Positions 34,760 through 54,622 of a stretch of 64,000 nucleotides of DNA are shown here, one piece after another; position 1 is the first letter of the stretch, and the number at the start of each line of letters is the position of its first letter. The DNA is taken from positions 1 to 64,000 of the IMG/VR virus record IMGVR_UViG_3300028275_000006; one strand, 5' to 3'. The translations under genes and the position numbers were made by a program. Under the pieces are notes generated by a model, which saw only the letters and a program-made list of their open reading frames with translations, made no database searches and was not told the origin of the DNA.

Positions 34760-34789
34760 TTATGCTCCGTTTCTTTACTGTATGTTTAT

Positions 34790-34818: not shown

Positions 34819-34821
34819 GGT

Positions 34822-34845
34822 TAGAGGTGCATCTCTGCACCTCTA
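34822..34845. terminator. 10-bp hairpin downstream of the AAA ATPase gene
   Basis: TAGAGGTGCA/TGCACCTCTA stem; loop reads GAGA (GNRA) on minus; the T-tract follows only on the plus strand. Confidence 0.45.
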
Positions 34846-34851
34846 TTTTGG

Positions 34852-35952: not shown

Positions 35953-36001
35953 TACATGCTCCTGTGTTAAAAATGATTGCAATTAATTTCGCAGTATCAT
36001 T

Positions 36002-39619: not shown

Positions 39620-40483
39620 TTATGTTCCCCACTCATTTTTAAAGAGTGGAACTTGTAATCTATCGCTGTAGCGTAAACCGTTTTTCATTGCTAGTTCCGC
39701 TACACGCCTGTTGTTAAGAGTATAGACACTTTCAACGCCACCCACGGGCATAAGATATATAGGACCGGTAAAACCATTTTCTCTATAAATGTCAGCAGTT
39801 TCAATTGCTTCCTCCGCATCTTCTTCTGTGGCCACTACAAATTTAAGATATGTATGACCGTATTCTTCGTATTCACAAACTACGTCTGGACGAATTGCTT
39901 CGTGACGTTCTTCACCGGAGCAACTTAATTTAGCACTAACACTAAATGTAACTTCTCGCCAAAAATCTTTATCGCTGTGATATTTCCATGTGTGCAGATA
40001 TTGCTTGAACTCGTCGGTGAGTTTTTGAGTACCATTCGTTTCAAATGTAATCTCTTTTAAGTTTGTCATTTTTGGATGGTCGAGCAAGTCTGGATACGCT
40101 CGTTGCCATCCAAGCAAAGGTTCCCCTCCGGTAATGACCAAGTGTTCGTCTCGCCATTCGTTGAAGGGTAGAATCTCTGCGATCCTGTCTGCGATGGCGT
40201 CTGAAGTGAGCATTGGACTAAGATCCTTAAAGCGAGGATCCCAACTAGCATAACTATCACAGCCCGTAGATACCAAAGGAAGTTCTTCATATTTTTTATA
40301 TGGGGTTCGTTCATGTTGGATTGCAATATCTTCAACTTCTGTACTTAGTTCACCTTTTGGTAATCCAAAGCCAGCACATTTAAAGTTACAACCAAATGTT
40401 CTCAAGAAAACAGACGGTACACCCATGTAACGTCCTTCGCCTTGAATACTATAAAATAATTCTGCAATTTTTAATTTGCTCAT
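39620..40483 (-). CDS. queE: 7-carboxy-7-deazaguanine synthase (radical SAM)
   Basis: ELFYSIQGEG, VFLRTFGCN, VITGGEP, ETNGT, RLQVPL; the Cys motif is split by an insertion. Confidence 0.9.
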   Translation of the reverse strand: MSKLKIAELFYSIQGEGRYMGVPSVFLRTFGCNFKCAGFGLPKGELSTEVEDIAIQHERTPYKKYEELPLVSTGCDSYASWDPRFKDLSPMLTSDAIADRIAEILPFNEWRDEHLVITGGEPLLGWQRAYPDLLDHPKMTNLKEITFETNGTQKLTDEFKQYLHTWKYHSDKDFWREVTFSVSAKLSCSGEERHEAIRPDVVCEYEEYGHTYLKFVVATEEDAEEAIETADIYRENGFTGPIYLMPVGGVESVYTLNNRRVAELAMKNGLRYSDRLQVPLFKNEWGT

Positions 40484-41261: not shown

Positions 41262-41473
41262 TTGCATGTCTCCAACCATTTATCAAGAATATTTACAGCA
41301 TCATTGAAATCGATACCATATACTTCTGCACTGATAACATTGTCTTTGATTTGTATATCAAACGGAACAGTTCCGTTAAATCGAAAATCTTCGGGAACAT
41401 CTGTCTCTACAATATACTTGTGTAGATTTTTTGCTCTATTAATTAAATTAGTCGCCATGTCTACTGAATTCAT
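41258..41473 (-). CDS. hypothetical protein
   Basis: 71 aa, overlaps the folE stop codon. Confidence 0.55.
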   Translation of the reverse strand: MNSVDMATNLINRAKNLHKYIVETDVPEDFRFNGTVPFDIQIKDNVISAEVYGIDFNDAVNILDKWLETCK

Positions 41474-42168
41474 CTTGGTGCAAACTCCTGTTGTAGTTTA
41501 ATGTTATCAAAGAACTCTTTCTTTGTACCAGCATCGTCTTTGAACGCACCTTTAAGTACAGTAGTTTGAGTTAATGAACTATGTGCCATAATGCCACGAT
41601 TCTCACAGCATCCATGAACTGCCTGAATATAAACGCCAATATCACTTGCGCCAGTGGCCTTTTCAATTTCTCTGGCTATGTCGTTACACAATTCTTCCTG
41701 TAAGGTACCACGACGAGCGCACCATTGCGCGATTCGTGTGTATTTTGACAGCCCAATGAGTTTTTGGGCGGCGATGATTCCGATGTAGGCAACACCAGAA
41801 ACAGGCTGATGATGATGACTACACATACTACGAAGCTCACTCCTAACCACCAACATACCCTCATAACGATCTTCGCTATCGTTAGGAAACGCTGTTGCAT
41901 CTGGTGCTGGTTCATATCTTCCTGCCATTATTTCGTTAAAGTACATTTTTGCTAATCGTTTCGCTGTACCGTGCGAGTTAGGATCTGTCTCTCTGTCAAT
42001 AAGAAGTTTGTCTAAAACACTTTCAAATGCCTCAGTTGCTTCTTTGATTAGTTGTTCTTTGACTAGATCAGATTCGATGTATTCGCTGATGTTATCTCCT
42101 GCCCAGAATCTTTTTCCGTCTAGGACCATCTTTTCGCGAATCGCTTGTGCTAAATTTTTTTCTGACAT
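41470..42168 (-). CDS. folE: GTP cyclohydrolase I
   Basis: SMCSHH, GLSKYTRI, QEELC, HGCCENRGI. Confidence 0.95.
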   Translation of the reverse strand: MSEKNLAQAIREKMVLDGKRFWAGDNISEYIESDLVKEQLIKEATEAFESVLDKLLIDRETDPNSHGTAKRLAKMYFNEIMAGRYEPAPDATAFPNDSEDRYEGMLVVRSELRSMCSHHHQPVSGVAYIGIIAAQKLIGLSKYTRIAQWCARRGTLQEELCNDIAREIEKATGASDIGVYIQAVHGCCENRGIMAHSSLTQTTVLKGAFKDDAGTKKEFFDNIKLQQEFAPR

Positions 42169-42635: not shown

Positions 42636-42804
42636 TCCAAAGTTCTTGTGCTCTGCGCTTATAGTCTTCTAATTCCCACACGGCTAATTTTTCACGAAAT
42701 ACTTCTTCGCTTAATCCGTGCCAGCCGATACAGTCTCCTGTAGGACTACGACCACAACCGCAAGTTCCAATTTTCTTTCCTTCTTCAGGTACTCTTACTT
42801 GCAT
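42604..42804 (-). CDS. CDGSH-like Fe-S/zinc-finger protein
   Basis: CGCGRSPTGDCIGWH resembles C-x-C-x2-S-x5-C-D-G-S-H; likely start MQVRV. Confidence 0.55.
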   Translation of the reverse strand: MQVRVPEEGKKIGTCGCGRSPTGDCIGWHGLSEEVFREKLAVWELEDYKRRAQELWNDSCTSGRSE

Positions 42805-43168
42805 TTTTATAATTTCCTTTACTTGGTATAACGTGACGAACCCCGCCACGAGGGTCTTCCATATCACCCTTGCGTCTAGGGATCATGTGTATATGAGGAT
42901 ACATTACTGTTTGGCCAGCAGTCTCGCCACAGTTTTGTCCGACATTAAAAGCGTCCCAACGTTCAGATTGGACACCATCGAACCCGAACTTGTATGCTCC
43001 TTTGAAACATTCGACGATGTTGGTAAAACGTTCATAGGTTGGCACAAAAAGCAAATGTCCTTCCGTAACTGGGTAGGCATCGTTGAAGACCCAATAGTCT
43101 TTTGTTCTGTACTCGATACTAGTCCATGGTGCTCTGCGTTCATCTAGTGCCCTTTCTAAATCAGTCAT
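42785..43168 (-). CDS. HIT-family nucleotide hydrolase
   Basis: DAYPVTEGHLLFVP; GETAGQTVMYPHIHMIPRR.GD. Confidence 0.88.
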   Translation of the reverse strand: MTDLERALDERRAPWTSIEYRTKDYWVFNDAYPVTEGHLLFVPTYERFTNIVECFKGAYKFGFDGVQSERWDAFNVGQNCGETAGQTVMYPHIHMIPRRKGDMEDPRGGVRHVIPSKGNYKNASKST

Positions 43169-43716
43169 AACCAAAATTCTTCCCAAGGATAAACAAGCCA
43201 ACAATCTTCTTGTCGCTTGTCTACGGTCCAAACATGATAGTCTGGATCTTTAAACTCACTGCCGTAATTATGTGTTAATACAGCAAAACGAACATTGTCT
43301 CCCCATACTTGATTCCATGCTTCATCGTTAGGAAAACAACCACTGGGCCAATCTTTCTTAATCCAATTAAGAGTAGATCCTTGATCGTTAATATCGTCTA
43401 CAATTAAGATTTTCTTTTTAAGACGTTCTAAATGTTTGTGATCGCCCCAAATGTGCCTTTCGTCATTGGGAACAACTCCCAAGGCATCTTCGGCCATCCA
43501 AAGATTACTTTCGCAATCGTTTTTATTATCGCGAAGGCTGACATTAAGTGTGTGCATCTTAATGCCAGTATATTGACTTAGTAAGTTAGCCGGAACAAGA
43601 CCACCGCGTGTAATACCTACAATATAGTCAGGCCTCCAATTATGTTCAGACATTTGGCGAGCAATTTCTAAACATGCGCCTTCAACTTGTGACCAACTGT
43701 AGTATACTTTCTTCAT
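43165..43716 (-). CDS. type I phosphoribosyltransferase (purine/Gpt-like)
   Basis: IVGITRGGLVPA, PRPP-binding ILIVDDINDQGST, WLVYPWE. Confidence 0.88.
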   Translation of the reverse strand: MKKVYYSWSQVEGACLEIARQMSEHNWRPDYIVGITRGGLVPANLLSQYTGIKMHTLNVSLRDNKNDCESNLWMAEDALGVVPNDERHIWGDHKHLERLKKKILIVDDINDQGSTLNWIKKDWPSGCFPNDEAWNQVWGDNVRFAVLTHNYGSEFKDPDYHVWTVDKRQEDCWLVYPWEEFWL

Positions 43717-43949
43717 GCAGTTAACCCATAGGCCAATGATTGACATTCTTCTTTAGTCATAAAGAAATTATAAGTTTGTGTACCAACAACTTCACCGTCT
43801 TTAAGACTTTCTTGAACCATATCGATACTAAACAAACCTTTAGGGCTTAGTACTTCGTGTTTCTTTAATGTTAGCCTAAAACCGGCGTGTTCTTTGACAA
43901 CCATTTCTTTATAAGTATCTCTAACTGATTCATGTAGTTCCATCATCAT
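43713..43949 (-). CDS. hypothetical protein
   Basis: 78 aa, coupled to the PRTase start. Confidence 0.55.
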   Translation of the reverse strand: MMMELHESVRDTYKEMVVKEHAGFRLTLKKHEVLSPKGLFSIDMVQESLKDGEVVGTQTYNFFMTKEECQSLAYGLTA

Positions 43950-44382
43950 CTCCTTTAATTGCGTCCCACGTTCTATATTTGGCTAATGCCTTAATATAGT
44001 CATCATACATCTTTTTTAACTTTGGATGCTTCTTTTCTAGTTTAACATCTCGCTCGGGAATTTGCAAGACTTTTTCAATTGTGTTTAACCTTTCTTCTAG
44101 GTCAACACCATTTAATACCATTCGACCTTTAACTTCTAACTCCGGTGGATCGTTTTTGGCAACCATCACCGGATTGGTAGTAGGATTAGCCCAAGTTACA
44201 TTTGTACCTGTAGTATAAGTTAACGGCACAGATGTAGTGCCGGCTCCGGTTGAAATCGTATATCCACTGCCAGAGCCGCCTGTGCCGTTCGATACTAAAA
44301 CACTACCTGAACCGGCACCGGAACCTGCTATGCCGCCGGCTGTATTAAGTATTACGCTTCCGTGATTGTAAGTATAGCTCAT
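43930..44382 (-). CDS. hypothetical protein with a Gly/Thr-rich N-terminus and a helical C-terminus
   Basis: 150-aa ORF. Confidence 0.6.
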   Translation of the reverse strand: MSYTYNHGSVILNTAGGIAGSGAGSGSVLVSNGTGGSGSGYTISTGAGTTSVPLTYTTGTNVTWANPTTNPVMVAKNDPPELEVKGRMVLNGVDLEERLNTIEKVLQIPERDVKLEKKHPKLKKMYDDYIKALAKYRTWDAIKGDDDGTT

Positions 44383-44800
44383 TTGGTATCCATTTATTAT
44401 TAACGAGAAATCCCCATTCTCTCTTTTGCGGACCTGGCATAAAAAGTGTCCAACACTCTACGTTGGGATCAATTTCAATTCTATGAAAACTGTTGGCACT
44501 ACAAATTCTAAAGTGTCCAGGCTTTCTCCATTTGGCAATTTCACAGACCTTTACTCCCTGGCTGTTAAATTGAGGAATCCATTCCCAATAGCCACCTTTT
44601 AGAATAAGTGTGGCATAAGGCCATGGGTGATCATGCACATCATCTGGATCACCTTTATGAAACTTGTGTAAGAATACATTAAATGGAAACCATTTACGAT
44701 CCTTTAAAAATAGATAATAACGTGTAAGTAACGGCTCGTCACAGGTACGATCCATAATAATACGCTTGCGACCGAGACGTTCTAACAGTTTTAATATCAT
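44345..44800 (-). CDS. cupin-fold protein
   Basis: HDHPWP...LKGGYWE and distal FHRIE: the H-x-H...E...H metal site. Confidence 0.75.
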   Translation of the reverse strand: MILKLLERLGRKRIIMDRTCDEPLLTRYYLFLKDRKWFPFNVFLHKFHKGDPDDVHDHPWPYATLILKGGYWEWIPQFNSQGVKVCEIAKWRKPGHFRICSANSFHRIEIDPNVECWTLFMPGPQKREWGFLVNNKWIPNELYLQSRKRNT

Positions 44801-45870
44801 ACAAGTCTTTCTAAGAGTCCATTTGCAGAAAAGAAATTTTCAGTTAAGTCTTGAGTTTGTTTTCTAAGTTGTGGTAAAAACTTTTCATAGTTATCCATAT
44901 ACTGGATAATCTTTGCACATATTTCTGGACGGTGTGCTTTATATGCTTCGAAACTTTCAGTCCATTCACTAGGATACTTAAAAGTATCATAGCCCATTTC
45001 ACTGTAACTAAGTCTATCTGGCACCATAGGAATAGCATCTACAACAGCGCCTTCATACCAACTAATCCCTAATGTCTCTTGTAAGTTTGCAGAGAACACT
45101 AATTTCGATTCGCCTAACAAGTTATGATATTCATTTTTTGTTAGTTGTTGATCCTGACAGACTACGAACTCGTACTGTGGCAAGTGTTCTTTTAAATCTC
45201 TAAAAATTTCAACTTGCTTCTCGGGTGCGATGCGATGAGGGAAAAGAATTAAATCACGTTTTTTCATCCCTTTATATGGAGTTAATGTATCTTCCATATA
45301 CTCCATTGGCCAACCTGTGCGTACAATTTTTCCTTTATCGATATATGATGCTTTTGCAGTATCGTAATCTATGTTTAAAAGATTATGACAAAACATTTCA
45401 ATATGGAATGTTGTAGCAAAGTAGTTATGATCTATAGCATGAAAGAAACTCTTTTCAGCATTTCTGACCCAAGGAGCATCGCCAATTAGACGACCTAAAA
45501 AGTCCTGTGGATCGTAACTACCGGCATGCCATAGTGCGTGAATAGTTACAGGAATCTGTAACAGTTCACTCATATACTTTAGGTTGATGATACCAGGGTG
45601 CCAAGCATCAGTAAAGATGAAGTGATCATTAGGAGCCACTGATCCGGCGCAAAACAACCTACCCATTTGCTCAACTTGAGCAGACTTGTATATATTGGTG
45701 CCACCAAAATTAAGAAAAGCACCAGGAGTAGTGGCTGAAGGAATATCCGTAGGCCCAGATAAAACTTGAACATCGTGTCCTCTCTTTCTCAGGATAGCCG
45801 GTAGGTGGGTCTTCCACTGCGCTGTATAGCGTGTTTCTACCGGCTCAAGGTCTACTAAGTAGACGGTCAT
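44797..45870 (-). CDS. GT-B glycosyltransferase (GT4-like)
   Basis: LFPHRIAPEK; EX7E motif ETLGISWYE; IPMVPDRLSYSE. Confidence 0.82.
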   Translation of the reverse strand: MTVYLVDLEPVETRYTAQWKTHLPAILRKRGHDVQVLSGPTDIPSATTPGAFLNFGGTNIYKSAQVEQMGRLFCAGSVAPNDHFIFTDAWHPGIINLKYMSELLQIPVTIHALWHAGSYDPQDFLGRLIGDAPWVRNAEKSFFHAIDHNYFATTFHIEMFCHNLLNIDYDTAKASYIDKGKIVRTGWPMEYMEDTLTPYKGMKKRDLILFPHRIAPEKQVEIFRDLKEHLPQYEFVVCQDQQLTKNEYHNLLGESKLVFSANLQETLGISWYEGAVVDAIPMVPDRLSYSEMGYDTFKYPSEWTESFEAYKAHRPEICAKIIQYMDNYEKFLPQLRKQTQDLTENFFSANGLLERLV

Positions 45871-46100
45871 TGGCGACCATTCCTGTAGTTGTTATTGTAC
45901 CCGTTGTTATTACGGGGACGATTTTCAAATCGTCTGTCGTTGTTATAACGACGAGGACGCTTAGACGCCTCGTAAGCCTGCCAAGTTTTACTTTGGCGGT
46001 TATACAAGTCTGCCTCATTGTAAGGCAGAAGGTTGAATCTGCAAAAATCTAGCAGATTGTCAAGATCGTCAAAAATTTGAACGACTTCTTTTTTCATCAT
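45867..46100 (-). CDS. small protein with an Arg/Asn-rich tail
   Basis: C-terminal RPRRYNNDRRFENRPRNNNGYNNNYRNGRQ. Confidence 0.6.
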   Translation of the reverse strand: MMKKEVVQIFDDLDNLLDFCRFNLLPYNEADLYNRQSKTWQAYEASKRPRRYNNDRRFENRPRNNNGYNNNYRNGRQ

Positions 46101-46108
46101 TGTTTCCT

Positions 46109-46504
46109 TTAGTATTTGATGAATGAACCATTTTCTCCGTCTTCGGAGACCTCAATCCAAATCTCGCGATTTGGATACTTCTTGCTAATGATGTCATGTA
46201 ATTCGTCAGACATCATTTCACAACTCTTGTAGTCAAGGCTTATAGTGGCACCTTGACCATTATACAACGACTCGAGCCATCGTTTGAATTGGATGAATTC
46301 GATGTCCCTGTCATTGTGTTGCACACTGATCCACACCCTGAAATGAAAGATGTGGCGATGAGGGTGACCCAAAAACGATACGTCATATTCGTCTCCTGTT
46401 GCTAGATTAGGATCTGTTAGTGCCGCAGGATACTTATGGATACCTTCTTTGCGGAAAGTTACCCAGATCATTTTGTTTGGTCTAATGTCTTGTTTGATAA
46501 TCAT
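46109..46504 (-). CDS. dpdL: QueD-paralogous T-fold protein, DpdL-like
   Basis: LGHPHRHIF (LxxxHRHxF in place of QueD CxxxHGH), SCEMMS, VSEDGENG; start at MIIKQ (ATGA overlap). Confidence 0.65.
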   Translation of the reverse strand: MIIKQDIRPNKMIWVTFRKEGIHKYPAALTDPNLATGDEYDVSFLGHPHRHIFHFRVWISVQHNDRDIEFIQFKRWLESLYNGQGATISLDYKSCEMMSDELHDIISKKYPNREIWIEVSEDGENGSFIKY

Positions 46505-47040
46505 GTTGGTGTATCTTGAGTGTACAAATCCCAATGAGTATACTTGTCTTTAGTCATTAGGCTTTGTAAATGATGTGTCCACACACCTGGATTTGTAGCA
46601 CCCCAAGTTCGGTCATCCAGTTTGAGTGTGGCATTGTAGTTGAGTTGATTAATGTAGGGTAACTTGACACTAATCATAGGTACAAACTTGGGATATTCGT
46701 TATAAGCAGACTCTAGTACGCCTTCGATGTGTTCAACACCAAAGTCTAGAGCTACCCAATAGCCTGCTTTTAGACAGCCTATAATAACTTCGTCCCATGC
46801 TTTGTATTCTTCGTGTGAAATACTTTTAGGATTAAAACTTTGACTAGTGCCAAAGTAAATTTGTTTAATGCGTTTGTTTTCGTCTAAGTATGCTTGTGTG
46901 TCACCAGCAATACGTAGTATTTCTTCTAGCGGAGGAGTGCCTACTACAAATAGTGTATACATACCATAGCAAATAGTATGTTCGACTTCGTAGCCTGTAA
47001 AGTAGACAATGTCTTGTCTTTCTTCAGTGTTTAATCCCAT
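46501..47040 (-). CDS. uncharacterised alpha/beta protein inside the deazaguanine cluster
   Basis: 179 aa; TLFVVG, IYFG, LKLDD...ATNPGVW; no family recognised. Confidence 0.7.
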   Translation of the reverse strand: MGLNTEERQDIVYFTGYEVEHTICYGMYTLFVVGTPPLEEILRIAGDTQAYLDENKRIKQIYFGTSQSFNPKSISHEEYKAWDEVIIGCLKAGYWVALDFGVEHIEGVLESAYNEYPKFVPMISVKLPYINQLNYNATLKLDDRTWGATNPGVWTHHLQSLMTKDKYTHWDLYTQDTPT

Positions 47041-47921
47041 TTAATATAACCTCTGCTATAACCATTTGGACGATCCACACCATCCGCAAATGCTTGTTGC
47101 CATTCTGTGTTACGATTATAACCTTTTGTCCAGAAAGAATCAACCTCTAGTTTACCGTTTTCAATCATCCAACGTGCTTCAAACATAGCACCAATAAATT
47201 CTTCTGTTCTTGGACTTGGTTTAACTGTAGTAACAGCCTTCCAAAGTTGTTGTTGTGCTTCTTCTTTACTTACTGCTTTACCAACAGCATCAATGATTAC
47301 TGCATTGTTATTTAGATTAATGTCGGTACCTAGTTGATATTTTCCAGATAAATCTACTATCAAATCGTAACTGTCGGTAGTACCTAACAGTAACGCATCT
47401 CCCCAAAGTTCCTGATTACTAGAACCTAGTACATCTACTTCAAGTTCTGGAAAATGATGTGCCAGGTTATTAAAAACTACCCATGCAAGGAAACCACTAC
47501 CTAGGATTAAGCATTTACCATTTTGTCTACGTTCAAAAAGAGTATACGCTTGTCTAATACAGTTAACACCACAGGCCACTGGTTCTAAAATGTAACGTGG
47601 ATGTAGTTCTAAAACTGTTACAAACTCACCGTCACGACAGTTGTAATAATCTGCGTATGCTGGTTCGCCGCGGGTAGCAACATAATCGCCTACTTTAACA
47701 CCTAATACACTGGCACCGACTTTAGTTACGATTCCTAGACCTTCGTGACCTTGCATGTGTAGTGGTAAAGGTCCAAAGTTGCCCTGCATCATATCTATGT
47801 CACTGCGACATACACCAGTCATAACTGCTTTAACTTCAATTTCAGTTGACGTAGGTTCTGGCTTTGCATATTCTACTTCTTCAAAGTAACCTTGTCCAGT
47901 TGTTTGTAGACAGCGTGTCAT
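47031..47921 (-). CDS. zinc-dependent medium-chain dehydrogenase (MDR)
   Basis: GVCRSD, GHEGLG, EPVACG, LILGSG; structural-zinc Cys lobe absent. Confidence 0.88.
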   Translation of the reverse strand: MTRCLQTTGQGYFEEVEYAKPEPTSTEIEVKAVMTGVCRSDIDMMQGNFGPLPLHMQGHEGLGIVTKVGASVLGVKVGDYVATRGEPAYADYYNCRDGEFVTVLELHPRYILEPVACGVNCIRQAYTLFERRQNGKCLILGSGFLAWVVFNNLAHHFPELEVDVLGSSNQELWGDALLLGTTDSYDLIVDLSGKYQLGTDINLNNNAVIIDAVGKAVSKEEAQQQLWKAVTTVKPSPRTEEFIGAMFEARWMIENGKLEVDSFWTKGYNRNTEWQQAFADGVDRPNGYSRGYIKWD

Positions 47922-48796
47922 AGTTTTTCTATTCTTTCGTGTATCCAAAGGTCAATTTCTAACTGTACTTTCCAGTACTCGTCATTATTTAGGTTTTCTA
48001 CAGCATCTTTAATCATATTTAGGTACGCTTCTTCTGGACACCAGCCTAACTCAAATACATCTTTGGTATTATCTTGATTAATAAATGTAATAGCACTACG
48101 TTCAACAGTCATACTGCGCCAGTTAGCACGGCAGTTCCATTTAGAACCAAATCCAATGTGACACTGGTCGTCTACATCATAAGTTCCATTTGGGTTTACA
48201 GTACCATACTCTGTGCTTTCGATATCTTTTAACAGCCATGATTGTATAGATGATTCGCCGTTAACTTTTTCTATGCGCCAGTCTGGATGTAGTGCAATAT
48301 ACAAACTTAATAAGTGTGGCATTAAGTCCCTACTAACTCCGCCAAATGCTAGTTTGCGTGTAGTAAACCAACTACCTGGGCTAGGAATACAGTTCTTTCT
48401 AATCCATTCGATGTCTACATTCTTTGCTACTTTAGCCTTTTCCTGTAATTCTGCAATATTGTCACGCCACATATTATTTTTAACCATCATAAATCGTGTG
48501 CGTGGAAATCTTTTACATAATTTAGCCCATTCGTTTCTATTAATCAGTCCAGGCTTTTCAATAAAGACAATTTTACTGATAGGAGCCAGTTTAACGGCTA
48601 ATTCTAAATGCGTAAAATTTGGTGTGCAAATATGTACGGTGTCAAAAGACCCGTGAAGTAATATGGCTGGTTCTATACTAGGGAAGTCGGCATTTTTATT
48701 AATGTCTGTATCGACAGTACAAACTTCATAACCTAATTGAGTTAGGACAGATTTATATAACTGTCCTATTCCCATTCCTACAACTAAACTTTTCAT
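47918..48796 (-). CDS. Gfo/Idh/MocA-family oxidoreductase
   Basis: VVGMGIG, ICTPNFTH, FIEKPG, GGVSRDLMPH. Confidence 0.85.
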   Translation of the reverse strand: MKSLVVGMGIGQLYKSVLTQLGYEVCTVDTDINKNADFPSIEPAILLHGSFDTVHICTPNFTHLELAVKLAPISKIVFIEKPGLINRNEWAKLCKRFPRTRFMMVKNNMWRDNIAELQEKAKVAKNVDIEWIRKNCIPSPGSWFTTRKLAFGGVSRDLMPHLLSLYIALHPDWRIEKVNGESSIQSWLLKDIESTEYGTVNPNGTYDVDDQCHIGFGSKWNCRANWRSMTVERSAITFINQDNTKDVFELGWCPEEAYLNMIKDAVENLNNDEYWKVQLEIDLWIHERIEKL

Positions 48797-49050
48797 CTAT
48801 ATGTTGGTAGTTCGTTAACACATTTAATAAGAGATCCGGATTGTTTGCCCGCTAATTGATGTAGCGCATAATCCGGAGAGGATACACAGGCTTCGTGCCC
48901 ATTGAATTTATCTGCTAGGGCAATGGTGTTGCCAGTTTCTGCAAATTTAATTACAAGATAGTAGTCGTTTGGACCCACGGCATCTGCCGTTTTATAAAAC
49001 AAACCAAAACTTAATACTGCTAAAACACCAATGCCTAGTAGTTTTTTCAT
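48793..49050 (-). CDS. small exported protein
   Basis: Signal peptide MKKLLGIGVLAVLSFG..ADA; two Cys. Confidence 0.6.
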   Translation of the reverse strand: MKKLLGIGVLAVLSFGLFYKTADAVGPNDYYLVIKFAETGNTIALADKFNGHEACVSSPDYALHQLAGKQSGSLIKCVNELPTYR

Positions 49051-50594
49051 TTTACGCCTTCTTCGAGTTCGTCAAGTTTAGCAATTTCATCATCGGTAAA
49101 TTCTTCACCGTGCTCTAATTGTACACTCTCTTCCTCTACTTCGTCAAACAGTTTGGCAAATTGTGTACTTGCGTTTACAGTCTTCTTACCTACTGCTCCG
49201 CGAGTTCCAATAATACTTTGCCAAAATTTATTATACTCTTCAACGACTTTGTCTGCTTCTGCACGACTACTAGTAGCAAAAATGGCTTCTACTACATCTT
49301 TAAAGAATAGTCTATCAAACCGTTCTTCTACTAACATAGCAGGAACAATGCCCAAATCGTATTGACGATTGGCTTCTTGTACAGCATTAATGTGCATCCA
49401 AACATTATGGCCCATTAAGATAGCGTAACTAAAACTATCCCACGAAGTTTTACCTTCCTTGCCAATCTTGTTTAGATCCCCGGGCCCGTAAATACAAACA
49501 TCTTTAATTTGAACCCCGTCAATAATTGGACTATTGTCAAAGTTTTTAAAATGTCCGTCCTGTACTACTGCATCGCGGAATAGTCTAGTATCTTTACTAT
49601 ATTTTTTATTATCGATACTAGGTAACATTCTATATACCCACTTAGTTCTGTCTTGTGTTTCTGTTTGAACGTATACTTGTCCGTTTGCAGTTGCTAAGAA
49701 TGGACTAGCACAGTCGAAACTAATTGTAAAGTTAGGATTGTGATACTTGCGTACAGCACGTTGAATGTCTGTTAATAAACAAGCCCACTCTAATTTACTA
49801 GTACCTAAGAAGTGCATCCAGTCTTGTTTGCCCTGTTCAAGTAATCCGTCAAATCGTAATGCTACTAGGCGTTTTAATACCAAGTGTACATCACACATAT
49901 TCTGACCACCCATGGCCCAACCGTTAAATGCACGGTCACCGTAGACAGTAGGATCGCAGTACTTCTTCATTCGGTCATACCAATCGTCTGCATCGGTATG
50001 ATTTTCACCTTGGAGAACGTTTAAGAATTTACAATTACCATTGCGATTGTTTACAAACCAATCGTTGTTAATGTAAGTACCTTGAACTGCTTCTGCGTAT
50101 GTAGTAATGCCTGTGGCTTTTTGTCCAGCAGGGCTACGAGCTACCCAAGCAGGGATATCAAGACACATACCATAGTCCATTAGACTATCCATCCACTTAA
50201 GAACCTGTTCACGTTTCTTTTGTGCTTTAGGACAGTTGGGATTCTTCCAATCGCCTTCCCATACACCTTTACCAATTTGGAAACCACCGGAGTCGCCTAG
50301 TACCCAACTAGTACTGCGATCTCTATTACGAAACATATCTTCGCTGTGATCAACTTTGTTAAGGTCTAGATTAGCATGACCTGCACTATACAAGCAGTGG
50401 TCATAGTAGAACGCACCTTTTTCCGGTTCTAAGTAGTTTAGACTTTCTACTCCGTTTTTAAAACTAGCAGGAACTCTTGCCGGATCAACATAGTTTCCAT
50501 ATCTTTGTTTACCTATAAAGGTACTATAGAAACCGCTAGTTGCCGGCAAAAAGTATGCGTAGTCGTTTTGTGTTGCGGTTAAATTTTTATTCAT
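49047..50594 (-). CDS. dpdA: TGT-fold guanine transglycosylase, DpdA-like (7-deazaguanine insertion)
   Basis: TGT barrel motifs in order: LGDSGGFQ, CLDIP, NVLQG, WAMGG, MHFLG, SFDCASP; no CxCxxC zinc site of tRNA TGTs. Confidence 0.82.
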   Translation of the reverse strand: MNKNLTATQNDYAYFLPATSGFYSTFIGKQRYGNYVDPARVPASFKNGVESLNYLEPEKGAFYYDHCLYSAGHANLDLNKVDHSEDMFRNRDRSTSWVLGDSGGFQIGKGVWEGDWKNPNCPKAQKKREQVLKWMDSLMDYGMCLDIPAWVARSPAGQKATGITTYAEAVQGTYINNDWFVNNRNGNCKFLNVLQGENHTDADDWYDRMKKYCDPTVYGDRAFNGWAMGGQNMCDVHLVLKRLVALRFDGLLEQGKQDWMHFLGTSKLEWACLLTDIQRAVRKYHNPNFTISFDCASPFLATANGQVYVQTETQDRTKWVYRMLPSIDNKKYSKDTRLFRDAVVQDGHFKNFDNSPIIDGVQIKDVCIYGPGDLNKIGKEGKTSWDSFSYAILMGHNVWMHINAVQEANRQYDLGIVPAMLVEERFDRLFFKDVVEAIFATSSRAEADKVVEEYNKFWQSIIGTRGAVGKKTVNASTQFAKLFDEVEEESVQLEHGEEFTDDEIAKLDELEEGVK

Positions 50595-51163: not shown

Positions 51164-51898
51164 TTATTTGCTCTGTGCTGGCAAGATGTAATCATATACA
51201 GCAACACCGCTGTCAACAGTAATCTGCATAGCACCTGCATCTGCAATCTTCATAGTAATATTACCATCGAGATTTAAAATGCTTTGTACTTGTGCAACAG
51301 GCCATGACCATGTGTGCTTTAACTTGCCGCCAACATCGTGTTGGAATACAAAAGAACCTGCGTGTGTACTTGCATCACCGAAGAAGAATACAAGATTGTT
51401 ATCTTCTGTACGAACTTGGAAAACAGTTTCTTCACTGTGTGCCGCACTTTGTAACTTCAAACGACCAATTGCCGCCATGCTTGGTTCAAACTCAACTTCC
51501 CATGTTGCACCTTTGAACTTAACAGATTTTAGTTTTTCGTTAATAAGTTCTGATGCCATGAAACGATAATCGTTTTGGAAGTCACCTGCTTGGTTTTCAA
51601 AGTGCAAACCTACTGGAACTGTGTTGCCGTTACGTTCCGCAGTAACTACATCGATCTTTGCGTTTTCTTTATACTCTGGATTCTTCAAGTGAAGATTTAA
51701 CTTGTCCAAGTTTGGCATACCAAATGTGCCATCAAACTCTGATACTGGCTTGTGTGCAGTAGCAGTAACAATAACGCTACGATCCTCTGCCATTGATTCG
51801 ATAGTTGTGCTATCTTTAGCACCTGTAATTTTTACCAAAGGCAAAAAGCCTAGGCTATGTGTATGTGCTACGATGTCGGTTAGAATATCTTTAATCAT
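51164..51898 (-). CDS. DNA polymerase sliding clamp (gp45-like)
   Basis: 244 aa with a two-domain beta pattern; FGMPNLDKL resembles gp45 FAIYDL; lies just downstream of the polymerase. Confidence 0.6.
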   Translation of the reverse strand: MIKDILTDIVAHTHSLGFLPLVKITGAKDSTTIESMAEDRSVIVTATAHKPVSEFDGTFGMPNLDKLNLHLKNPEYKENAKIDVVTAERNGNTVPVGLHFENQAGDFQNDYRFMASELINEKLKSVKFKGATWEVEFEPSMAAIGRLKLQSAAHSEETVFQVRTEDNNLVFFFGDASTHAGSFVFQHDVGGKLKHTWSWPVAQVQSILNLDGNITMKIADAGAMQITVDSGVAVYDYILPAQSK

Positions 51899-51919: not shown

Positions 51920-51948
51920 ATTATATTTAGGTTTTTGGTCAAAGTCAA
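51920..51948 (-). promoter_or_regulatory. sigma70-type promoter heading the clamp-dpdA-GT operon
   Basis: TTGACT-N17-TATAAT followed by an AAGGAG SD. Confidence 0.85.
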
Positions 51949-51952: not shown

Positions 51953-54622
51953 TTAAAACTCAAACAGTTGATTAAATGTGTTCTTTTCTTCTGTGGATTT
52001 AATATCCCAGTTAAGAACTCCAATTAAGTTTTCTAGTTTGTTATCTATAATAGTTTGTTCCATTTCTGCATCGTCGAATGGAAGTTCCATAAACCATTTA
52101 GGCAAACGTAGTTCGTCTACAGGATATGCTACCGATGTGTACCCTAGCGGATTTGCTTTGAGTTTACATACAATAACTTTTTGGCCGTCTGTGACCTGCA
52201 TACTATACTTGTCCGAATTCATTCGACGCAGAGTATTCCAATTAATACTTGCACGAACGTGTCCAGGCATATTAGCCTTGCCCTGTTTCTTTTCTTTGGC
52301 TTCGTACTCAGTAATGTTGTTGGCTCGCTTAGGAGAACCTTTCTCCCAACCAGGACGGGCCTTAAACTCTGTACGGAATTGAGTAATGTGATCTAATACT
52401 TGTTCTTCTGTAGCACCAGTTAGAACTTTCTCAAGTACATCACTTAAAAAGTCTTGAATAAATGCAGGAGTATCACTGCGCTTCAAGTCTAAGCCCATGG
52501 CCTTGATCTTGCCTGGTTTACCATCTACGTCTGCACGTTTGCCTTCTTTATCATAGTAAAGTACAGCATAACGTTTCTTAGTAATAAACAATCCTTTACT
52601 AGCAACAATTTCTCGACCTGCTCGAATAACATCACCACGACTTGGCGGGCAATGAAATGCCTGCTCCATAAACTTAACGAATGTACTGTTTACTTCCTCG
52701 CCAATTTGGTCATAGAGTGCAGTAACGTTTTCCTTAGTCCAAGGAATAACTCCAGATTCGATGTCTTTCTTTAATGTAGTATATGCACTGAAATAACAAG
52801 AGTCTGTATCACCATAGATAACTGCCTTACCTACGTGATTGTATTCACCTGTGATAATTTCATTTACTTTACTAGCCATGTGTTTGGCAATTTGTCTACC
52901 GACTAGAGTAGTTGACTGTCCAATACGTTTATCGAAGAATCTACAACCTGGGTTAAGAATAGCACCATACAAACTGTTCAAGTTAATCTTTTTAACTAAC
53001 TGACGTTTATCCCAATACTCTTCTTCGACCTTGTTACCTGCCTGAATACATTCTTTTAATTTGGCCTGCATTTCTTTACGTTCAGCATACCAACGCTTTA
53101 ACAGTCCAGGAATAATACCTTCCTTTTCGTAGGTAAAGATTGTACCATTTGCCGAAAGCATCCAAGGCTGATGACTATCAAAAATAACTTTATATACTTC
53201 TGCACCACTGTGTACAGTACTGTTGCCATCTTCCCAGTCTATGGTAATTTCCACATCTTTACGTTGTGCCATAACTGCTTCGTATTCGTCAGTTCCAAAC
53301 TTGCCTTCCCAACTGCCTGCAAACGATTTCTTTTTAAGAGTCATTTGTTCATGGATAAATGCTTCTGTCATTGTAGGACGTAATTGACCTACAATAGTTT
53401 CCGGACCCATGTTAAGCGCACGAATGGCGCTTGGATAAAGACTGTTAATATCCAGCGATCCAATCCAATCTTGCAGACCTTCTTTCGGATGTGCTACATA
53501 AGCACCAGCAGCCGCAGTATTTTCATCGTCATCTCGTTTAGGACGATTAGGAACTTGGAAACCTCTACGATGCGCTTCGTTAATAATAGCCTGTTCGGTA
53601 ACAGCCACAGCACCCATTGTAGTCTGTAATAATACAGTATTTTCATGTGCAATTTTATTAGCAAGGTCAATGAATTTAAGTTTTTCATCTAGTTTGTTTA
53701 ATAGTGCAACGTCTTGTCTGTTATACACAATAAATCTTTTAAAGTCATTGTTGTATAGTTGATCAAGTGTGCCTTCGTAAACAGTTTTGTTCTCGCCAAT
53801 TTCCATTTCACCGATGGCATCTAATCGATAGGTGTGTCGTTCTTCGTAGGTAAACTTGCGATAAAGTTCTAGACTGTCTAAGTGTACACGACCAATTAAG
53901 TCATATGTTTGTGCAGTCTTGCCATACTTTTCATATTCTCTACGTTTAGGAAATTGATTCCATAGACAGAAACGTCTTGTATCTTCTTTACTTAACACCT
54001 GTGTCACACGGTTAACAGTATAAGGAATATCATAGCCTTCGCTGTTCCAACCTGTGATAATGTCTGCATCTTGAATTAAATCTAAGAATGTTTCCAACAT
54101 ATCTGCTTCATTAGTAAACAGATGTGTATCTGGAATATCGGCTACTAACGCTTCGGCTTCAGCAAAGGTTAATGTCTTTGGAGGAAGAGCCAGTGTAATT
54201 AATTTGTCTAACCATTTTAGGTGAACTGTGATAGCAGTAATTGGCATAAACGCATCTTCAGGAGTGCTATAGCCGCGTTCTGGATCGAAGTCCACCTCAA
54301 TGTCGAAGAAGCAAATATTTAGATTAGGTGCATCTTGATTTAGATAGTTTTCGCTTAGATGTACAAAAATTGGATTGATGTCGCTTTCGTATAAGTCCTT
54401 ACCACTGTTAATGGCTAATTCTTTTCGAAAGTCTTTGGTGTTTTTACAAACTACCCTAGTCAGCGGATCGCCGTAAATGCTAGTAAACTTGCCTTTTTGA
54501 TCCGGATAGTAAAACGTGTAGCGTACAGGATGTTCTTTGAAAACCCGTTCGCCTTGGTCGTTTCGCTCTACGACCTTAATAATATCATTCTCTCTGTCAA
54601 AGAGAGCGTCAACGTAACTCAT
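51953..54622 (-). CDS. gp43: family B DNA polymerase (gp43-like)
   Basis: ExoI FFDIE, ExoII WNSEGYD, ExoIII YNRQD; DINSLYPS, KINLNSLYG, YGDTDS. Confidence 0.97.
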   Translation of the reverse strand: MSYVDALFDRENDIIKVVERNDQGERVFKEHPVRYTFYYPDQKGKFTSIYGDPLTRVVCKNTKDFRKELAINSGKDLYESDINPIFVHLSENYLNQDAPNLNICFFDIEVDFDPERGYSTPEDAFMPITAITVHLKWLDKLITLALPPKTLTFAEAEALVADIPDTHLFTNEADMLETFLDLIQDADIITGWNSEGYDIPYTVNRVTQVLSKEDTRRFCLWNQFPKRREYEKYGKTAQTYDLIGRVHLDSLELYRKFTYEERHTYRLDAIGEMEIGENKTVYEGTLDQLYNNDFKRFIVYNRQDVALLNKLDEKLKFIDLANKIAHENTVLLQTTMGAVAVTEQAIINEAHRRGFQVPNRPKRDDDENTAAAGAYVAHPKEGLQDWIGSLDINSLYPSAIRALNMGPETIVGQLRPTMTEAFIHEQMTLKKKSFAGSWEGKFGTDEYEAVMAQRKDVEITIDWEDGNSTVHSGAEVYKVIFDSHQPWMLSANGTIFTYEKEGIIPGLLKRWYAERKEMQAKLKECIQAGNKVEEEYWDKRQLVKKINLNSLYGAILNPGCRFFDKRIGQSTTLVGRQIAKHMASKVNEIITGEYNHVGKAVIYGDTDSCYFSAYTTLKKDIESGVIPWTKENVTALYDQIGEEVNSTFVKFMEQAFHCPPSRGDVIRAGREIVASKGLFITKKRYAVLYYDKEGKRADVDGKPGKIKAMGLDLKRSDTPAFIQDFLSDVLEKVLTGATEEQVLDHITQFRTEFKARPGWEKGSPKRANNITEYEAKEKKQGKANMPGHVRASINWNTLRRMNSDKYSMQVTDGQKVIVCKLKANPLGYTSVAYPVDELRLPKWFMELPFDDAEMEQTIIDNKLENLIGVLNWDIKSTEEKNTFNQLFEF

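What the first reader, a model, noticed from the sequence alone, without database searches (positions are those of the whole stretch)
42785..50594. Possible nucleotide-level (pre-replicative) route: DpdA-like enzyme, PRTase, HIT and a phage polymerase
Seen: a purine-type PRTase and a HIT hydrolase share the operon with the transglycosylase, which is headed by the sliding clamp, and the phage has its own family B polymerase. Established: PRTases join free bases to PRPP, and some phages replace bases at the dNTP level. Inference: the deazaguanine may be made into a nucleotide and incorporated during replication, giving high or complete G replacement rather than site-specific exchange.
Basis: inference. 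Interest (0 to 1): 0.62.

Follow-up and report, generated by a model that had tools for sequence, protein, structure and literature searches.

The report
Clamp-tethered deazaguanine DNA-swapping module
This jumbo-phage operon encodes enzymes to make 7-deazaguanine and a tRNA-guanine-transglycosylase-like enzyme that probably rides the sliding clamp to swap it into new DNA; the PRTase and HIT genes that suggested a nucleotide-level route are real but dispensable accessories.

Summary
They are a family B polymerase, a probable sliding clamp, a 515-aa TGT-fold enzyme (no Pfam hit; VIA Z 17-18; all three catalytic Asp aligned), a Gpt-type purine PRTase and a HIT protein translationally coupled to it.

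These are DpdL (proposed CDG decarboxylase), a conserved GT4 glycosyltransferase, FolE and QueE; QueD lies elsewhere on the contig and there is no QueC. The system is therefore a phiST/PA5oct-type 7-deazaguanine system.

The nucleotide-level route is not favoured, for three reasons:
- The transglycosylase carries a tail motif that mirrors its own polymerase's C-terminal peptide in six phage lineages. It is predicted to dock on the clamp (score 0.64, best control 0.00).
- The PRTase is missing from 8 of 41 close relatives and from ACP17, Phosso and Vibrio 2.275.O.
- HIT is present in only 19 of 41 relatives.

The PRTase does sit beside FolE or QueE in five phage lineages, so a link to the pathway is real. 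I read it as salvage of the expelled guanine. A TubE-like CDG nucleotide route stays possible at about 15%. Replication-coupled, high-level replacement is plausible, but by base exchange on DNA.

The parts
51953..54622 (-). Family B DNA polymerase (889 aa). Its C-terminus ends in the short motif TFNQLFEF.
   Evidence: PF00136 and PF03104. 47% identical to the PA5oct polymerase. 73 of 77 relatives keep an FxxLF-type C-terminus.
51920..51948 (-). Sigma70-like promoter match (TTGACT-17-TATAAT) in the gap before the clamp gene.
   Evidence: 11 of 12 positions match. This is a consensus match only, and the total count of such sites in the region is not above shuffled sequence.
51164..51898 (-). Probable sliding clamp (244 aa, gp45/PCNA-like).
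   Evidence: Named PCNA or sliding clamp in phages PAC2 and Phosso. Atlas feature neighbours are PCNA and gp45-slide_C clusters, 0.95-0.98. Present in 80 of 80 loci. No Pfam or PDB sequence hit; fold not tested.
49047..50594 (-). DpdA-like DNA guanine transglycosylase (515 aa, P0002). It has a TGT TIM-barrel, and D101, D146 and D294 are invariant.
   Evidence: The family is very large and has no Pfam model.
49137..49169 (-). Clamp-binding-type motif (residues 476-486, STQFAKLFDEV) inside the disordered tail of P0002.
   Evidence: pLDDT is below 50 for residues 464-495. The motif recurs in diverse homologues. In the predicted complex, residues 474-486 contact the clamp. The motif co-varies with polymerase tails.
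47918..48796 (-). GFO/IDH/MocA-type oxidoreductase; an optional cassette, present in 27 of 80 loci.
   Evidence: PF01408.
47031..47948 (-). Zn-alcohol-dehydrogenase-like oxidoreductase; optional, always paired with the GFO gene.
   Evidence: PF08240; 26 of 80 loci.
46501..47040 (-). Conserved 179-aa protein of unknown function. The Phosso annotation calls a positionally equivalent protein 'glycosylase', but that protein shows only 16% identity in my alignment.
   Evidence: 74 of 80 loci. ACP17 gp122 is 29% identical. No Pfam or PDB hit.
46109..46534 (-). DpdL, the proposed 7-carboxy-7-deazaguanine decarboxylase (a QueD-like T-fold protein).
   Evidence: The sequence contains LGHPHRHIF, which fits the LxxxHRHxF signature given in PMC10516641. 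phrog_17812. 57-66% identical to the motif-bearing proteins of ACP17 and Phosso.
44797..45870 (-). GT4-type (GT-B, retaining) glycosyltransferase with an EX7E motif (P0001). It is a core partner of the DpdA-like gene.
   Evidence: AF2 pLDDT 83.6. Foldseek hits BshA, MshA, PimA, glycogen synthase and BH4 glucosyltransferase at E 1e-7 to 1e-10. JGI and GenBank names. Homologues in PA5oct, Phosso, ACP17 and BUCT-ZZ01.
44345..44800 (-). Cupin-like protein (151 aa); optional.
   Evidence: phrog_4786; 37 of 80 loci.
43165..43746 (-). Gpt-type 6-oxopurine phosphoribosyltransferase. The likely true start is the ATG at 43716.
   Evidence: PF00156. XPRT is the best NCBIfam hit but falls below its cut-off. 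PDB 1VDM E 1e-23 and E. coli XGPRT E 5e-12. The VDDxxDxGxT motif is invariant. Present in 33 of 41 spanning loci.
42785..43168 (-). HIT-family protein (127 aa from the ATG that overlaps the PRTase stop codon).
   Evidence: PF01230; ATGA overlap; 19 of 41 spanning loci.
41470..42168 (-). GTP cyclohydrolase I (FolE).
   Evidence: PF01227 E 1e-38; NCBIfam FolE.
39620..40483 (-). QueE, 7-carboxy-7-deazaguanine synthase (radical SAM).
   Evidence: Five QueE NCBIfam models are the best hits, E down to 3e-13, all below curated cut-offs. 49% identical to the annotated QueE of BUCT-ZZ01.

Best explanation
This is a phiST/PA5oct-type 7-deazaguanine DNA modification module built into the replication operon of a jumbo phage.

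FolE, QueD (elsewhere on the contig) and QueE make 7-carboxy-7-deazaguanine. No QueC is found on the contig, and a DpdL homologue is predicted to decarboxylate the product to 7-deazaguanine.

The 515-aa TGT-fold enzyme then exchanges guanine for this base in double-stranded DNA. Its disordered C-terminal tail carries a copy of the short motif that ends the phage's own polymerase. Through that motif it is tethered to the sliding clamp, so it works directly behind the fork. This could explain near-complete replacement without any modified dNTP.

The Gpt-type PRTase is an accessory. I infer that it converts the expelled guanine to GMP. That would stop guanine from re-entering the exchange reaction and would refill the GTP pool that feeds FolE. 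HIT is a sporadic accessory of unknown role.

The conserved GT4 glycosyltransferase and the variable sugar-enzyme cassettes suggest a further glycosyl decoration.

Shown here: gene identities, the folds of the transglycosylase and the glycosyltransferase, synteny, and motif co-variation. Inferred: the clamp tether, the identity of the base, the guanine-salvage role and the extent of replacement.
For: - TGT fold, with the three aspartates aligned to E. coli TGT.
- DpdL signature present, QueD CxxxHGH motif present, no QueC on the contig. phiST has the same gene set and shows 100% dDG (PMC10516641).
- DNA of the relative PA5oct resists restriction enzymes whose sites contain G (PMC12191111).
- Polymerase C-terminus versus transglycosylase tail:
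  - ACP17: SLDDLFE / TLDELFE
  - Vibrio 2.275.O: NNTDLFDW / NNNDLFGW
  - BUCT-ZZ01: TLDDFFS / SLDSFFD
  - PA5oct: HFDSLFGW / SFNSLFDV
  - window: TFNQLFEF / QFAKLFDE
- Rank of the transglycosylase tail against the polymerase peptide among local ORFs: 1 of 72, 1 of 14, 2 of 32 and 2 of 37 in ACP17, Vibrio, BUCT-ZZ01 and PA5oct.
- Predicted clamp-tail complex: score 0.64 against a best control of 0.00. That mark is reached by 58 of 80 solved complexes and 2 of 110 mismatched pairs. The runs agree in at least 35% of contacts, and the partner's pLDDT is at least 47. The contacts fall on residues 474-486.
- The clamp and transglycosylase genes are neighbours, separated at most by one or two small ORFs, in 80 of 80 loci and in PA5oct and Vibrio 2.275.O.
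- The PRTase groups with Gpt-type and archaeal 6-oxopurine PRTases and keeps the Asp that corresponds to the N7-contacting Asp of HGPRT/XGPRT (the role of that residue is from memory).
- The PRTase is dispensable in 8 of 41 relatives.
Against: - No biochemistry: the base, the extent of replacement and the DNA substrate are all inferred.
- In the window's own genome, the ungapped score of the transglycosylase tail against the polymerase peptide ranks only 33 of 244. The regex that singles out 2 of 245 ORFs was written after seeing the motif.
- The complex predictor may be recalling solved clamp-peptide complexes, and the partner's fold is uncertain.
- The clamp fold was not tested.
- Guanine salvage does not explain why tblastn found the PRTase only in QueC-less phages and not in the other complete-replacement phages CP220 and immuto.
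- Hutinet et al. could not reconstitute dDG from DpdL plus DpdA alone, so an enzyme is missing from their scheme.
- The role of HIT is unexplained, although it is translationally coupled to the PRTase.
Confidence: 0.5

Rival explanations
1. The PRTase couples CDG (or 7-deazaguanine) to PRPP, as TubE does in tubercidin biosynthesis. DpdL decarboxylates at the nucleotide level. The phage ribonucleotide reductase and kinases then yield 7-deaza-dGTP, and the family B polymerase incorporates it. The TGT-like enzyme acts on nucleotides, or only mops up residual G.
For: - TubE is a CDG-specific purine-type PRTase and is followed by a decarboxylase (PMC6112128).
- All phage homologues of this PRTase found by tblastn lie in phages with FolE/QueE but no QueC. 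They are often adjacent to those genes, and in Brevundimonas StAshley they sit beside RNR and a dNMP kinase.
- The contig has an RNR and a MazG-like gene.
- DpdL plus DpdA alone failed to make dDG in E. coli.
- The ADG nucleoside was seen in CP220-infected cells.
Against: - The PRTase is absent from 8 of 41 close relatives and was not found in ACP17, Phosso or Vibrio 2.275.O, while the transglycosylase is always there.
- The transglycosylase keeps its catalytic residues and carries a clamp-type tail. From general knowledge, no TGT-superfamily member is known to act on free nucleotides.
- No HD dGTPase is present, and the MazG-like gene is about 120 kb away.
- The PRTase retains the Asp that contacts N7 in 6-oxopurine PRTases.
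Confidence: 0.15
2. The PRTase and HIT are general nucleotide-pool auxiliary genes (purine salvage for a large, fast-replicating genome). They have no specific tie to the modification. Their position merely reflects clustering of nucleotide-metabolism genes in the replication module.
For: - The sequence is of the Gpt type.
- Both genes are dispensable among relatives.
- HIT homologues are scattered in actinophages with no deazaguanine genes.
- They occupy a variable slot that holds other cargo in relatives.
Against: Every phage record that tblastn found with this PRTase family (10 records, plus PA5oct by BLASTP) also carries FolE or QueE, usually within a few genes. This holds in at least five unrelated lineages. 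None of the many DpdA1/DpdA2 phages in the collection was hit.
Confidence: 0.17
3. The PRTase and HIT belong to the variable decoration cassette that serves the GT4 glycosyltransferase. They might make or edit a nucleotide-linked donor, or add a phosphoribosyl group to the deazapurine, rather than salvaging guanine or making a dNTP.
For: - In relatives without the PRTase, the same slot holds NDP-sugar enzymes: UDP-glucose/GDP-mannose dehydrogenase, a 4,6-dehydratase/epimerase, a DegT aminotransferase and a B12 radical SAM enzyme.
- The GT4 gene is core to the module.
- Some HIT enzymes are NDP-sugar or dinucleotide phosphorylases (general knowledge). The second NCBIfam hit is ATP adenylyltransferase.
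- HuiG, a GT4-family enzyme, glycosylates a 7-deazapurine base (bioRxiv 10.64898/2026.04.15.718813).
Against: - The PRTase coexists with the GFO/ADH sugar cassette in many loci, so it does not simply alternate with sugar genes.
- phiST has the PRTase but no GT4 homologue in the regions examined.
- There is no precedent for such a PRTase role.
Confidence: 0.08

Closest known systems
Cellulophaga phage phiST dDG system (DpdA3, DpdL, FolE, QueD, QueE; Hutinet et al. 2023, PMC10516641)
   Same: CDG pathway without QueC. A DpdL with the LxxxHRHxF signature. A distant TGT-like enzyme close to the polymerase gene. A homologous Gpt-type PRTase in the genome.
   Different: The transglycosylase here is twice as long (515 against 259 aa) and only weakly related (hhalign 58% probability). 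It has a clamp-type tail, which phiST DpdA3 lacks. A GT4 glycosyltransferase, a 179-aa core protein and sugar-oxidoreductase cassettes are added. There is no MazG-like gene inside the cluster.
Pseudomonas jumbo phage PA5oct (Wroclawvirus) replication/deazaguanine module
   Same: Same gene order: polymerase, clamp, DpdA-like (33% identical), GT4 (41%), DpdL (54%), PRTase (25%), QueE, 5'-3' exonuclease (52%). PA5oct DNA is experimentally resistant to restriction enzymes whose sites contain G. Iyer et al. 2021 already listed a deazaguanine synthesis/incorporation system in it.
   Different: PA5oct lacks the GFO/ADH, cupin and HIT genes at this position in the region examined. Its modified base has not been identified chemically.
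Bacterial tRNA-guanine transglycosylase (TGT) and bacterial/phage DpdA
   Same: TIM-barrel fold (Z 17-18). The DSGGFQ, LD and FDC aspartates align to E. coli TGT.
   Different: No significant Pfam TGT match. No CxCxxC zinc motif in the sequence. An extra C-terminal helical region and a disordered tail with a clamp-type motif.
TubE/TubF steps of tubercidin biosynthesis (PMC6112128)
   Same: A purine-type PRTase and a decarboxylase encoded together with FolE/QueD/QueE and no QueC.
   Different: TubF is a UbiD-family enzyme, whereas DpdL is a T-fold protein. The tub cluster has no transglycosylase. Sequence relatedness of the phage PRTase to TubE was not tested.
Polymerase-clamp tethering in T4/RB69 (C-terminal peptide of gp43 bound to gp45; from memory, PDB 1B8H)
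   Same: A short hydrophobic LF/FF-containing peptide at the end of a flexible tail is predicted to dock between the clamp's interdomain loop and its C-terminus.
   Different: Here the motif is carried by a base-exchange enzyme as well as by the polymerase. In the window it is internal to the tail rather than at the extreme C-terminus.

Membership tests
TGT/DpdA transglycosylase superfamily | TGT-type TIM-barrel fold | tested here: met
   AF2 model pLDDT 90.8. Foldseek top 50 hits are all TGT, E about 2e-7. VIA Z 17-18, about 305 residues aligned, rmsd 4.5 A.
TGT/DpdA transglycosylase superfamily | Catalytic and substrate aspartates (E. coli D89, D143, D264; numbering from memory) | tested here: met
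   hhalign of A1 against E. coli TGT: 90.5% probability, E 1e-6. GDSGGFQ aligns to TDSGGFQ, CLDIP to IFDEC, and SFDCASP to MFDCVMP. D101, D146 and D294 are invariant in 55 diverse homologues.
TGT/DpdA transglycosylase superfamily | Zinc-binding CxCxxC...H subdomain | tested here: not met
   No CxCxxC motif in the 515-aa sequence. This region is replaced by other structure in the model.
TGT/DpdA transglycosylase superfamily | Significant match to Pfam PF01702 | tested here: not met
   No hit for the protein or anywhere on the contig. Only 3 of 55 homologues reach E 0.011 or weaker.
DpdA3 subfamily (complete-replacement type, Hutinet 2023) | Sequence relatedness to phiST CGPG_00065 | tested here: inconclusive
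   hhalign 58% probability, E 1e-4, 83 columns including the HFLG motif. The A1 profile hits the ACP17 DpdA gp123 at E 2e-9.
DpdA3 subfamily (complete-replacement type, Hutinet 2023) | Complete replacement of G in virion DNA | not testable with these tools
   Needs LC-MS of DNA.
DpdL (proposed CDG decarboxylase) | LxxxHRHxF signature in a QueD-like protein, encoded with FolE/QueD/QueE and without QueC | tested here: met
   LGHPHRHIF in the 141-aa ORF. No QueC on the contig. QueD is at C1:97001-97528. The signature is taken from PMC10516641.
6-oxopurine PRTase, Gpt/XGPRT type | Type I PRT fold motifs (RGG loop, VDDxxDxGxT PRPP motif, C-terminal WxxxPWE) | tested here: met
   Alignment A2. Profile hits 1VDM E 1e-23, Sulfolobus GpT and E. 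coli XGPRT.
6-oxopurine PRTase, Gpt/XGPRT type | Curated equivalog score (NCBIfam PRK09177) | tested here: not met
   47.5 bits against a cut-off of 138.
6-oxopurine PRTase, Gpt/XGPRT type | Guanine or xanthine as substrate, rather than CDG or 7-deazaguanine | not testable with these tools
   Both substrate classes share the 2-amino-6-oxo face. Only an assay can tell them apart.
TubE-like CDG phosphoribosyltransferase | Closer kinship to TubE/ToyH than to housekeeping Gpt/Hpt | not tested
HIT superfamily | HIT domain with a histidine motif | tested here: met
   PF01230 at 32.8 bits against a cut-off of 21.5. The motif reads PHIHMIP, so the last two histidines of the triad are kept and the first is Tyr.
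Pre-replicative non-canonical dNTP systems (such as Z-genome or T4 hmC phages) | A dedicated hydrolase that removes the canonical dNTP (here dGTP) | tested here: inconclusive
   No HD-domain protein on the contig. One small MazG-like ORF lies at C1:169057-169212, far from the operon. The contig is only about 55% of the genome.
Pre-replicative non-canonical dNTP systems (such as Z-genome or T4 hmC phages) | The enzyme that commits the base to the nucleotide pool is universal in the lineage | tested here: not met
   The PRTase is absent from 8 of 41 loci that span its slot, by both BLAST and profile search. It was not found in ACP17, Phosso or Vibrio 2.275.O.
Sliding clamp (gp45/PCNA-like) | Two-domain clamp fold | not tested
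   There are only names in related records, Atlas feature neighbours and a confident fold in the complex run (pLDDT 92). No fold search was run, and the sequence profile found nothing in the PDB.
GT4 retaining glycosyltransferases (GT-B) | GT-B two-Rossmann fold and EX7E motif | tested here: met
   Foldseek hits to BshA, MshA, PimA and the BA1558 GT4 enzyme, TM 0.6-0.66. E265 and E273 are invariant.

The most novel reading that the evidence does not exclude
Two routes may operate together. The cluster PRTase would act as a TubE-like enzyme, committing 7-carboxy-7-deazaguanine to the nucleotide pool. DpdL would decarboxylate it there, and the product would reach DNA as 7-deaza-dGTP through the phage polymerase. 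The clamp-tethered transglycosylase would proofread the remaining G. The conserved GT4 enzyme, with its variable sugar cassettes, would add a glycosyl group to the deazaguanine, giving a glycosylated 7-deazaguanine DNA base not yet described.
Probability: 0.12. Interest if true: 0.85.

Novelty: new variant of a known kind. Interest (0 to 1): 0.58.

Why it matters
Whether phages that replace every G with a 7-deazaguanine do so before or after replication is unsettled. Hutinet et al. argued for a post-replicative route only because a DpdA homologue is always present, and they could not reconstitute the DpdA3/DpdL reaction.

This locus belongs to a very abundant, unannotated transglycosylase family: about 8,000 clusters at 90% identity and at least 1,000 at 50%. 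It offers two concrete handles on the question. One is a clamp-binding-type tail that would explain how an exchange enzyme can reach completeness. The other is a PRTase recurrently linked to the QueC-less pathway, which the published scheme does not mention.

Both can be tested in the cultured relative PA5oct. Its DNA is known to carry a modified G of unknown structure, and phages of this kind are used against Pseudomonas aeruginosa. The GT4 gene and its changing sugar cassettes point to a possible further, undescribed decoration.

Tried and rejected
- Family scans: Pfam, PHROGs and NCBIfam gave nothing for the 515-aa, 357-aa, 244-aa and 179-aa proteins.
- Sequence and profile searches of PDB chains found nothing for the 515-aa protein, the clamp, the GT4 protein or the 179-aa protein. 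Only folding and fold search resolved the transglycosylase and GT4.
- Megablast of the region against phage genomes found no match.
It is a GT4 glycosyltransferase; the transglycosylase is the 515-aa ORF.
- An unbiased ungapped BLOSUM score of the polymerase's last 8 residues against all ORF tails of the contig ranked the transglycosylase only 33 of 244. The window alone therefore does not prove the motif link. The case rests on co-variation in the other lineages and on the complex prediction.
- I searched for dGTP-removing enzymes. No HD domain was found, and the only MazG-like ORF is distant.
I did not pursue it by other means.
- HIT as a pathway enzyme: its phage homologues are mostly in actinophages with no deazaguanine genes, and it is present in under half of the close relatives. 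I do not assign it a step.
- The paper's supplements, which list the DpdA3 members, are not held.

Full report
**Context.** The window is the first 64 kb of a 212.5-kb IMG/VR virus contig that CheckV estimates to be about 55% complete. Bases 1-30.8 kb on the plus strand hold a baseplate and tail-fibre module. From about 31 kb onward the genes run on the minus strand. The polymerase, the 5'-3' exonuclease and several unnamed genes are 33-52% identical to those of Pseudomonas jumbo phage PA5oct and Sinorhizobium phage Phosso, and they lie in the same order.

**The observation.**
- The family B polymerase is at 51953-54622.
- The 244-aa ORF at 51164-51898 has no family hit. It is called PCNA or sliding clamp in two related records, and its Atlas feature neighbours are PCNA and gp45 clusters.
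- The 'DpdA-like enzyme' is the 515-aa ORF at 49047-50594. It matches no Pfam, PHROG or NCBIfam model, and the contig has no PF01702 hit at all.
- With an alignment of 55 diverse homologues it folds confidently (pLDDT 90.8). Its best structural matches are all tRNA-guanine transglycosylases: Foldseek E about 2e-7 and VIA Z 17-18 over about 305 residues at 4.5 A.
- A profile comparison with E. coli TGT gives 90.5% probability. It aligns GDSGGFQ, LD and FDC with the three functional aspartates of TGT, and these residues are invariant in the family.
- The PRTase (43165-43746) and HIT are confirmed by Pfam. The HIT start is the ATG that overlaps the PRTase stop codon as ATGA, so the two are translationally coupled.
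- A near-consensus sigma70-like site lies in the 54-bp gap before the clamp gene. Others lie before polB and before FolE. 'Headed by the clamp' is therefore reasonable but rests on a consensus match only.

**What else is in the interval.**
- The 141-aa ORF at 46109-46534 carries LGHPHRHIF. This fits the LxxxHRHxF signature by which Hutinet et al. define DpdL, the proposed 7-carboxy-7-deazaguanine decarboxylase.
- FolE (41470-42168) and QueE (39620-40483) follow downstream. QueD lies at 97.0-97.5 kb on the contig, and no QueC is found on the contig.
- This is the gene set of Cellulophaga phage phiST, whose DNA has all G replaced by 7-deaza-2'-deoxyguanosine.
- The 357-aa ORF at 44797-45870 is a GT4-type GT-B glycosyltransferase with an invariant EX7E motif. 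Sources name its homologues glycosyltransferases.
- Two oxidoreductases (GFO/IDH/MocA type and ADH type), a cupin and several small ORFs complete the interval.

**Conservation.** I fetched 80 related viral loci through the transglycosylase and mapped the operon proteins onto them. The order is polB, clamp, transglycosylase, [GFO, ADH], 179-aa protein, DpdL, 77-aa protein, GT4, [cupin, 150 aa, 78 aa], PRTase, [HIT], FolE, QueE, 5'-3' exonuclease. Brackets mark optional cassettes.
- Of the 41 loci that span GT4 to FolE, 33 have the PRTase and 19 have HIT.
- A profile search confirms that the other 8 loci have no PRTase in the stretches fetched.
- In those 8, the slot holds NDP-sugar enzymes or nothing. 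The enzymes are UDP-glucose/GDP-mannose dehydrogenase, a 4,6-dehydratase/epimerase, a DegT aminotransferase and a B12 radical SAM protein.

**The PRTase outside this lineage.**
- tblastn finds homologues in only ten phage records. They are the phiST group, cyanophage BUCT-ZZ01, two Brevundimonas phages and two unannotated faecal phages.
- In BUCT-ZZ01 the gene lies between QueE and QueD/FolE.
- In Brevundimonas StAshley it follows FolE, next to RNR and a dNMP kinase.
- In PA5oct a weak homologue immediately precedes QueE.
- In phiST it lies near RNR, about 17 kb from the dpd cluster.
- The family is therefore genuinely linked to the QueC-less deazaguanine pathway. The 2023 paper never mentions a phosphoribosyltransferase.
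- By sequence it is a Gpt-type or archaeal 6-oxopurine PRTase. Sequence cannot tell guanine from 7-deazaguanine substrates.
- TubE shows that a purine-type PRTase can be CDG-specific.

**Evidence that the transglycosylase works on DNA at the fork.**
- Its last 50 or so residues are predicted to be disordered. They contain STQFAKLFDEV, and an FxxLF-type motif recurs near the C-terminus of most of the 55 diverse homologues.
- The phage's own polymerase ends in TFNQLFEF.
- The two tails co-vary across lineages. Polymerase tail versus transglycosylase tail:
  - ACP17: SLDDLFE / TLDELFE, both at the extreme C-terminus
  - Vibrio 2.275.O: NNTDLFDW / NNNDLFGW
  - BUCT-ZZ01: TLDDFFS / SLDSFFD
  - PA5oct: HFDSLFGW / SFNSLFDV
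  - Phosso: TFNDLFTF / a weaker VEGLF
- I scored each polymerase peptide against the tails of all local ORFs. The transglycosylase ranks 1 of 72 in ACP17, 1 of 14 in Vibrio, 2 of 32 in BUCT-ZZ01 and 2 of 37 in PA5oct. In the window's own contig it ranks only 33 of 244.
- A regex written after the fact picks out just the polymerase and the transglycosylase among 245 ORFs of the contig.
- From memory, in T4 and RB69 the C-terminal peptide of the polymerase is what binds the gp45 clamp.
- A complex prediction of the 244-aa protein with residues 461-515 of the transglycosylase passed the tool's mark. The score was 0.64 (runs 0.64, 0.70 and 0.33) against a best control of 0.00. That mark is reached by 58 of 80 solved complexes and 2 of 110 mismatched pairs. 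The runs agree in at least 35% of contacts, and the partner's pLDDT is at least 47. The confident contacts are between residues 474-486 and clamp residues 39-43, 124-131, 221-223 and 238-242.
- The tool warns that such a pass can reflect memory of solved clamp-peptide complexes and that the partner's own fold is uncertain.

A nucleotide-level route needs a committed enzyme that is always present, a way to remove dGTP, and no need for an exchange enzyme.
- Here the exchange enzyme is the invariant part, and it looks clamp-tethered.
- The PRTase is dispensable among close relatives. tblastn also does not find it in ACP17, Phosso or Vibrio 2.275.O, which all have the transglycosylase.
- In Vibrio 2.275.O the same transglycosylase family sits beside QueC, QueF and a precursor transporter. 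The family therefore serves different deazaguanines without any PRTase.
- HIT is sporadic.
- No HD dGTPase is present, and the only MazG-like ORF is about 120 kb away. The contig is incomplete, however.

I therefore favour base exchange on DNA, coupled to replication through the clamp. On this reading the PRTase removes the guanine that the exchange releases, in amounts comparable to the G content of all progeny DNA. This would prevent re-insertion and would feed GMP back towards GTP, the substrate of FolE.

That salvage role is an inference. It does not explain why the PRTase tracks the QueC-less systems rather than all complete-replacement phages. Hutinet et al. also failed to obtain dDG from DpdL plus DpdA alone, which leaves room for a TubE-like step.

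**Novelty.** Deazaguanine DNA modification, DpdL and distant DpdA subfamilies are known. Iyer et al. already noted a deazaguanine synthesis/incorporation system in PA5oct, and PA5oct DNA is known to carry a modified G.

Within the library I could search, I found no description of the following:
- the clamp-type tail on the transglycosylase and its co-variation with polymerase tails;
- the recurrent PRTase linkage;
- the conserved GT4 gene with changing NDP-sugar cassettes.

Together these make the locus a new variant of a known kind. It also gives a directly testable answer to how complete replacement might be achieved.

Noticed in passing
window 44797-45870 (-); L013, L035, L052, L064, L068 between the GT4 homologue and FolE: A GT4 glycosyltransferase is a core member of the deazaguanine cluster in this lineage, PA5oct, Phosso, ACP17 and BUCT-ZZ01. 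Relatives carry different NDP-sugar tailoring enzymes next to it: a dehydrogenase, a 4,6-dehydratase/epimerase, a DegT aminotransferase and a B12 radical SAM enzyme. This suggests a variable glycosyl decoration, possibly on the deazaguanine itself. HuiG, which glycosylates a 7-deazapurine, is a precedent.
   Followed up: partly
window 46501-47040 (-): A 179-aa protein is conserved in 74 of 80 loci and in ACP17 (gp122). A positionally equivalent Phosso protein (16% identity in my alignment) is annotated 'glycosylase'. It has no Pfam or PDB sequence match, and its role in the module is unknown.
   Followed up: partly
L005:11924-13267 (+) (Synechococcus phage BUCT-ZZ01): A second protein in the cyanophage's cluster (447 aa, directly after FolE) also ends in a polymerase-like tail: SLEDFFND against the polymerase's TLDDFFS. 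More than one enzyme of such clusters may be clamp-tethered.
   Followed up: no
L091:5905-7695 (+) (Vibrio phage 2.275.O): The same transglycosylase family sits in the arrangement polymerase, clamp, transglycosylase, next to QueF, a YhhQ-type precursor transporter, QueC, an amidotransferase-like gene and FolE. The family is therefore not restricted to DpdL-type chemistry.
   Followed up: partly
window 9907-23991 (+): A 4,694-aa ORF with no Pfam match lies in the baseplate and tail-fibre module, flanked by a VgrG-like hub, a tail-collar protein and a tail-fibre-like protein.
   Followed up: no
window 38936-39619 (-): A 2OG-Fe(II) oxygenase (PKHD/YbiX-like) lies just downstream of QueE. It was found near the module in only 1 of the 80 related loci, so it is probably lineage-specific cargo.
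   Followed up: no
window 33581-35982 (-): A MoxR-type AAA ATPase is followed by a DUF2201 metallopeptidase/VWA protein. PA5oct has an ATPase at the equivalent position.
   Followed up: no
window 30786-31631 (-): A canonical thymidylate synthase (PF00303, 361 bits). Nothing suggests a hydroxymethyl-pyrimidine pathway that could supply another acceptor for the GT4 enzyme.
   Followed up: partly
window 48793-49050 (-) and 50808-51161 (-): Two small ORFs with hydrophobic, signal-peptide-like or membrane-like segments sit inside the replication/modification operon. They are poorly conserved among relatives (3 and 13 of 80 loci).
   Followed up: no
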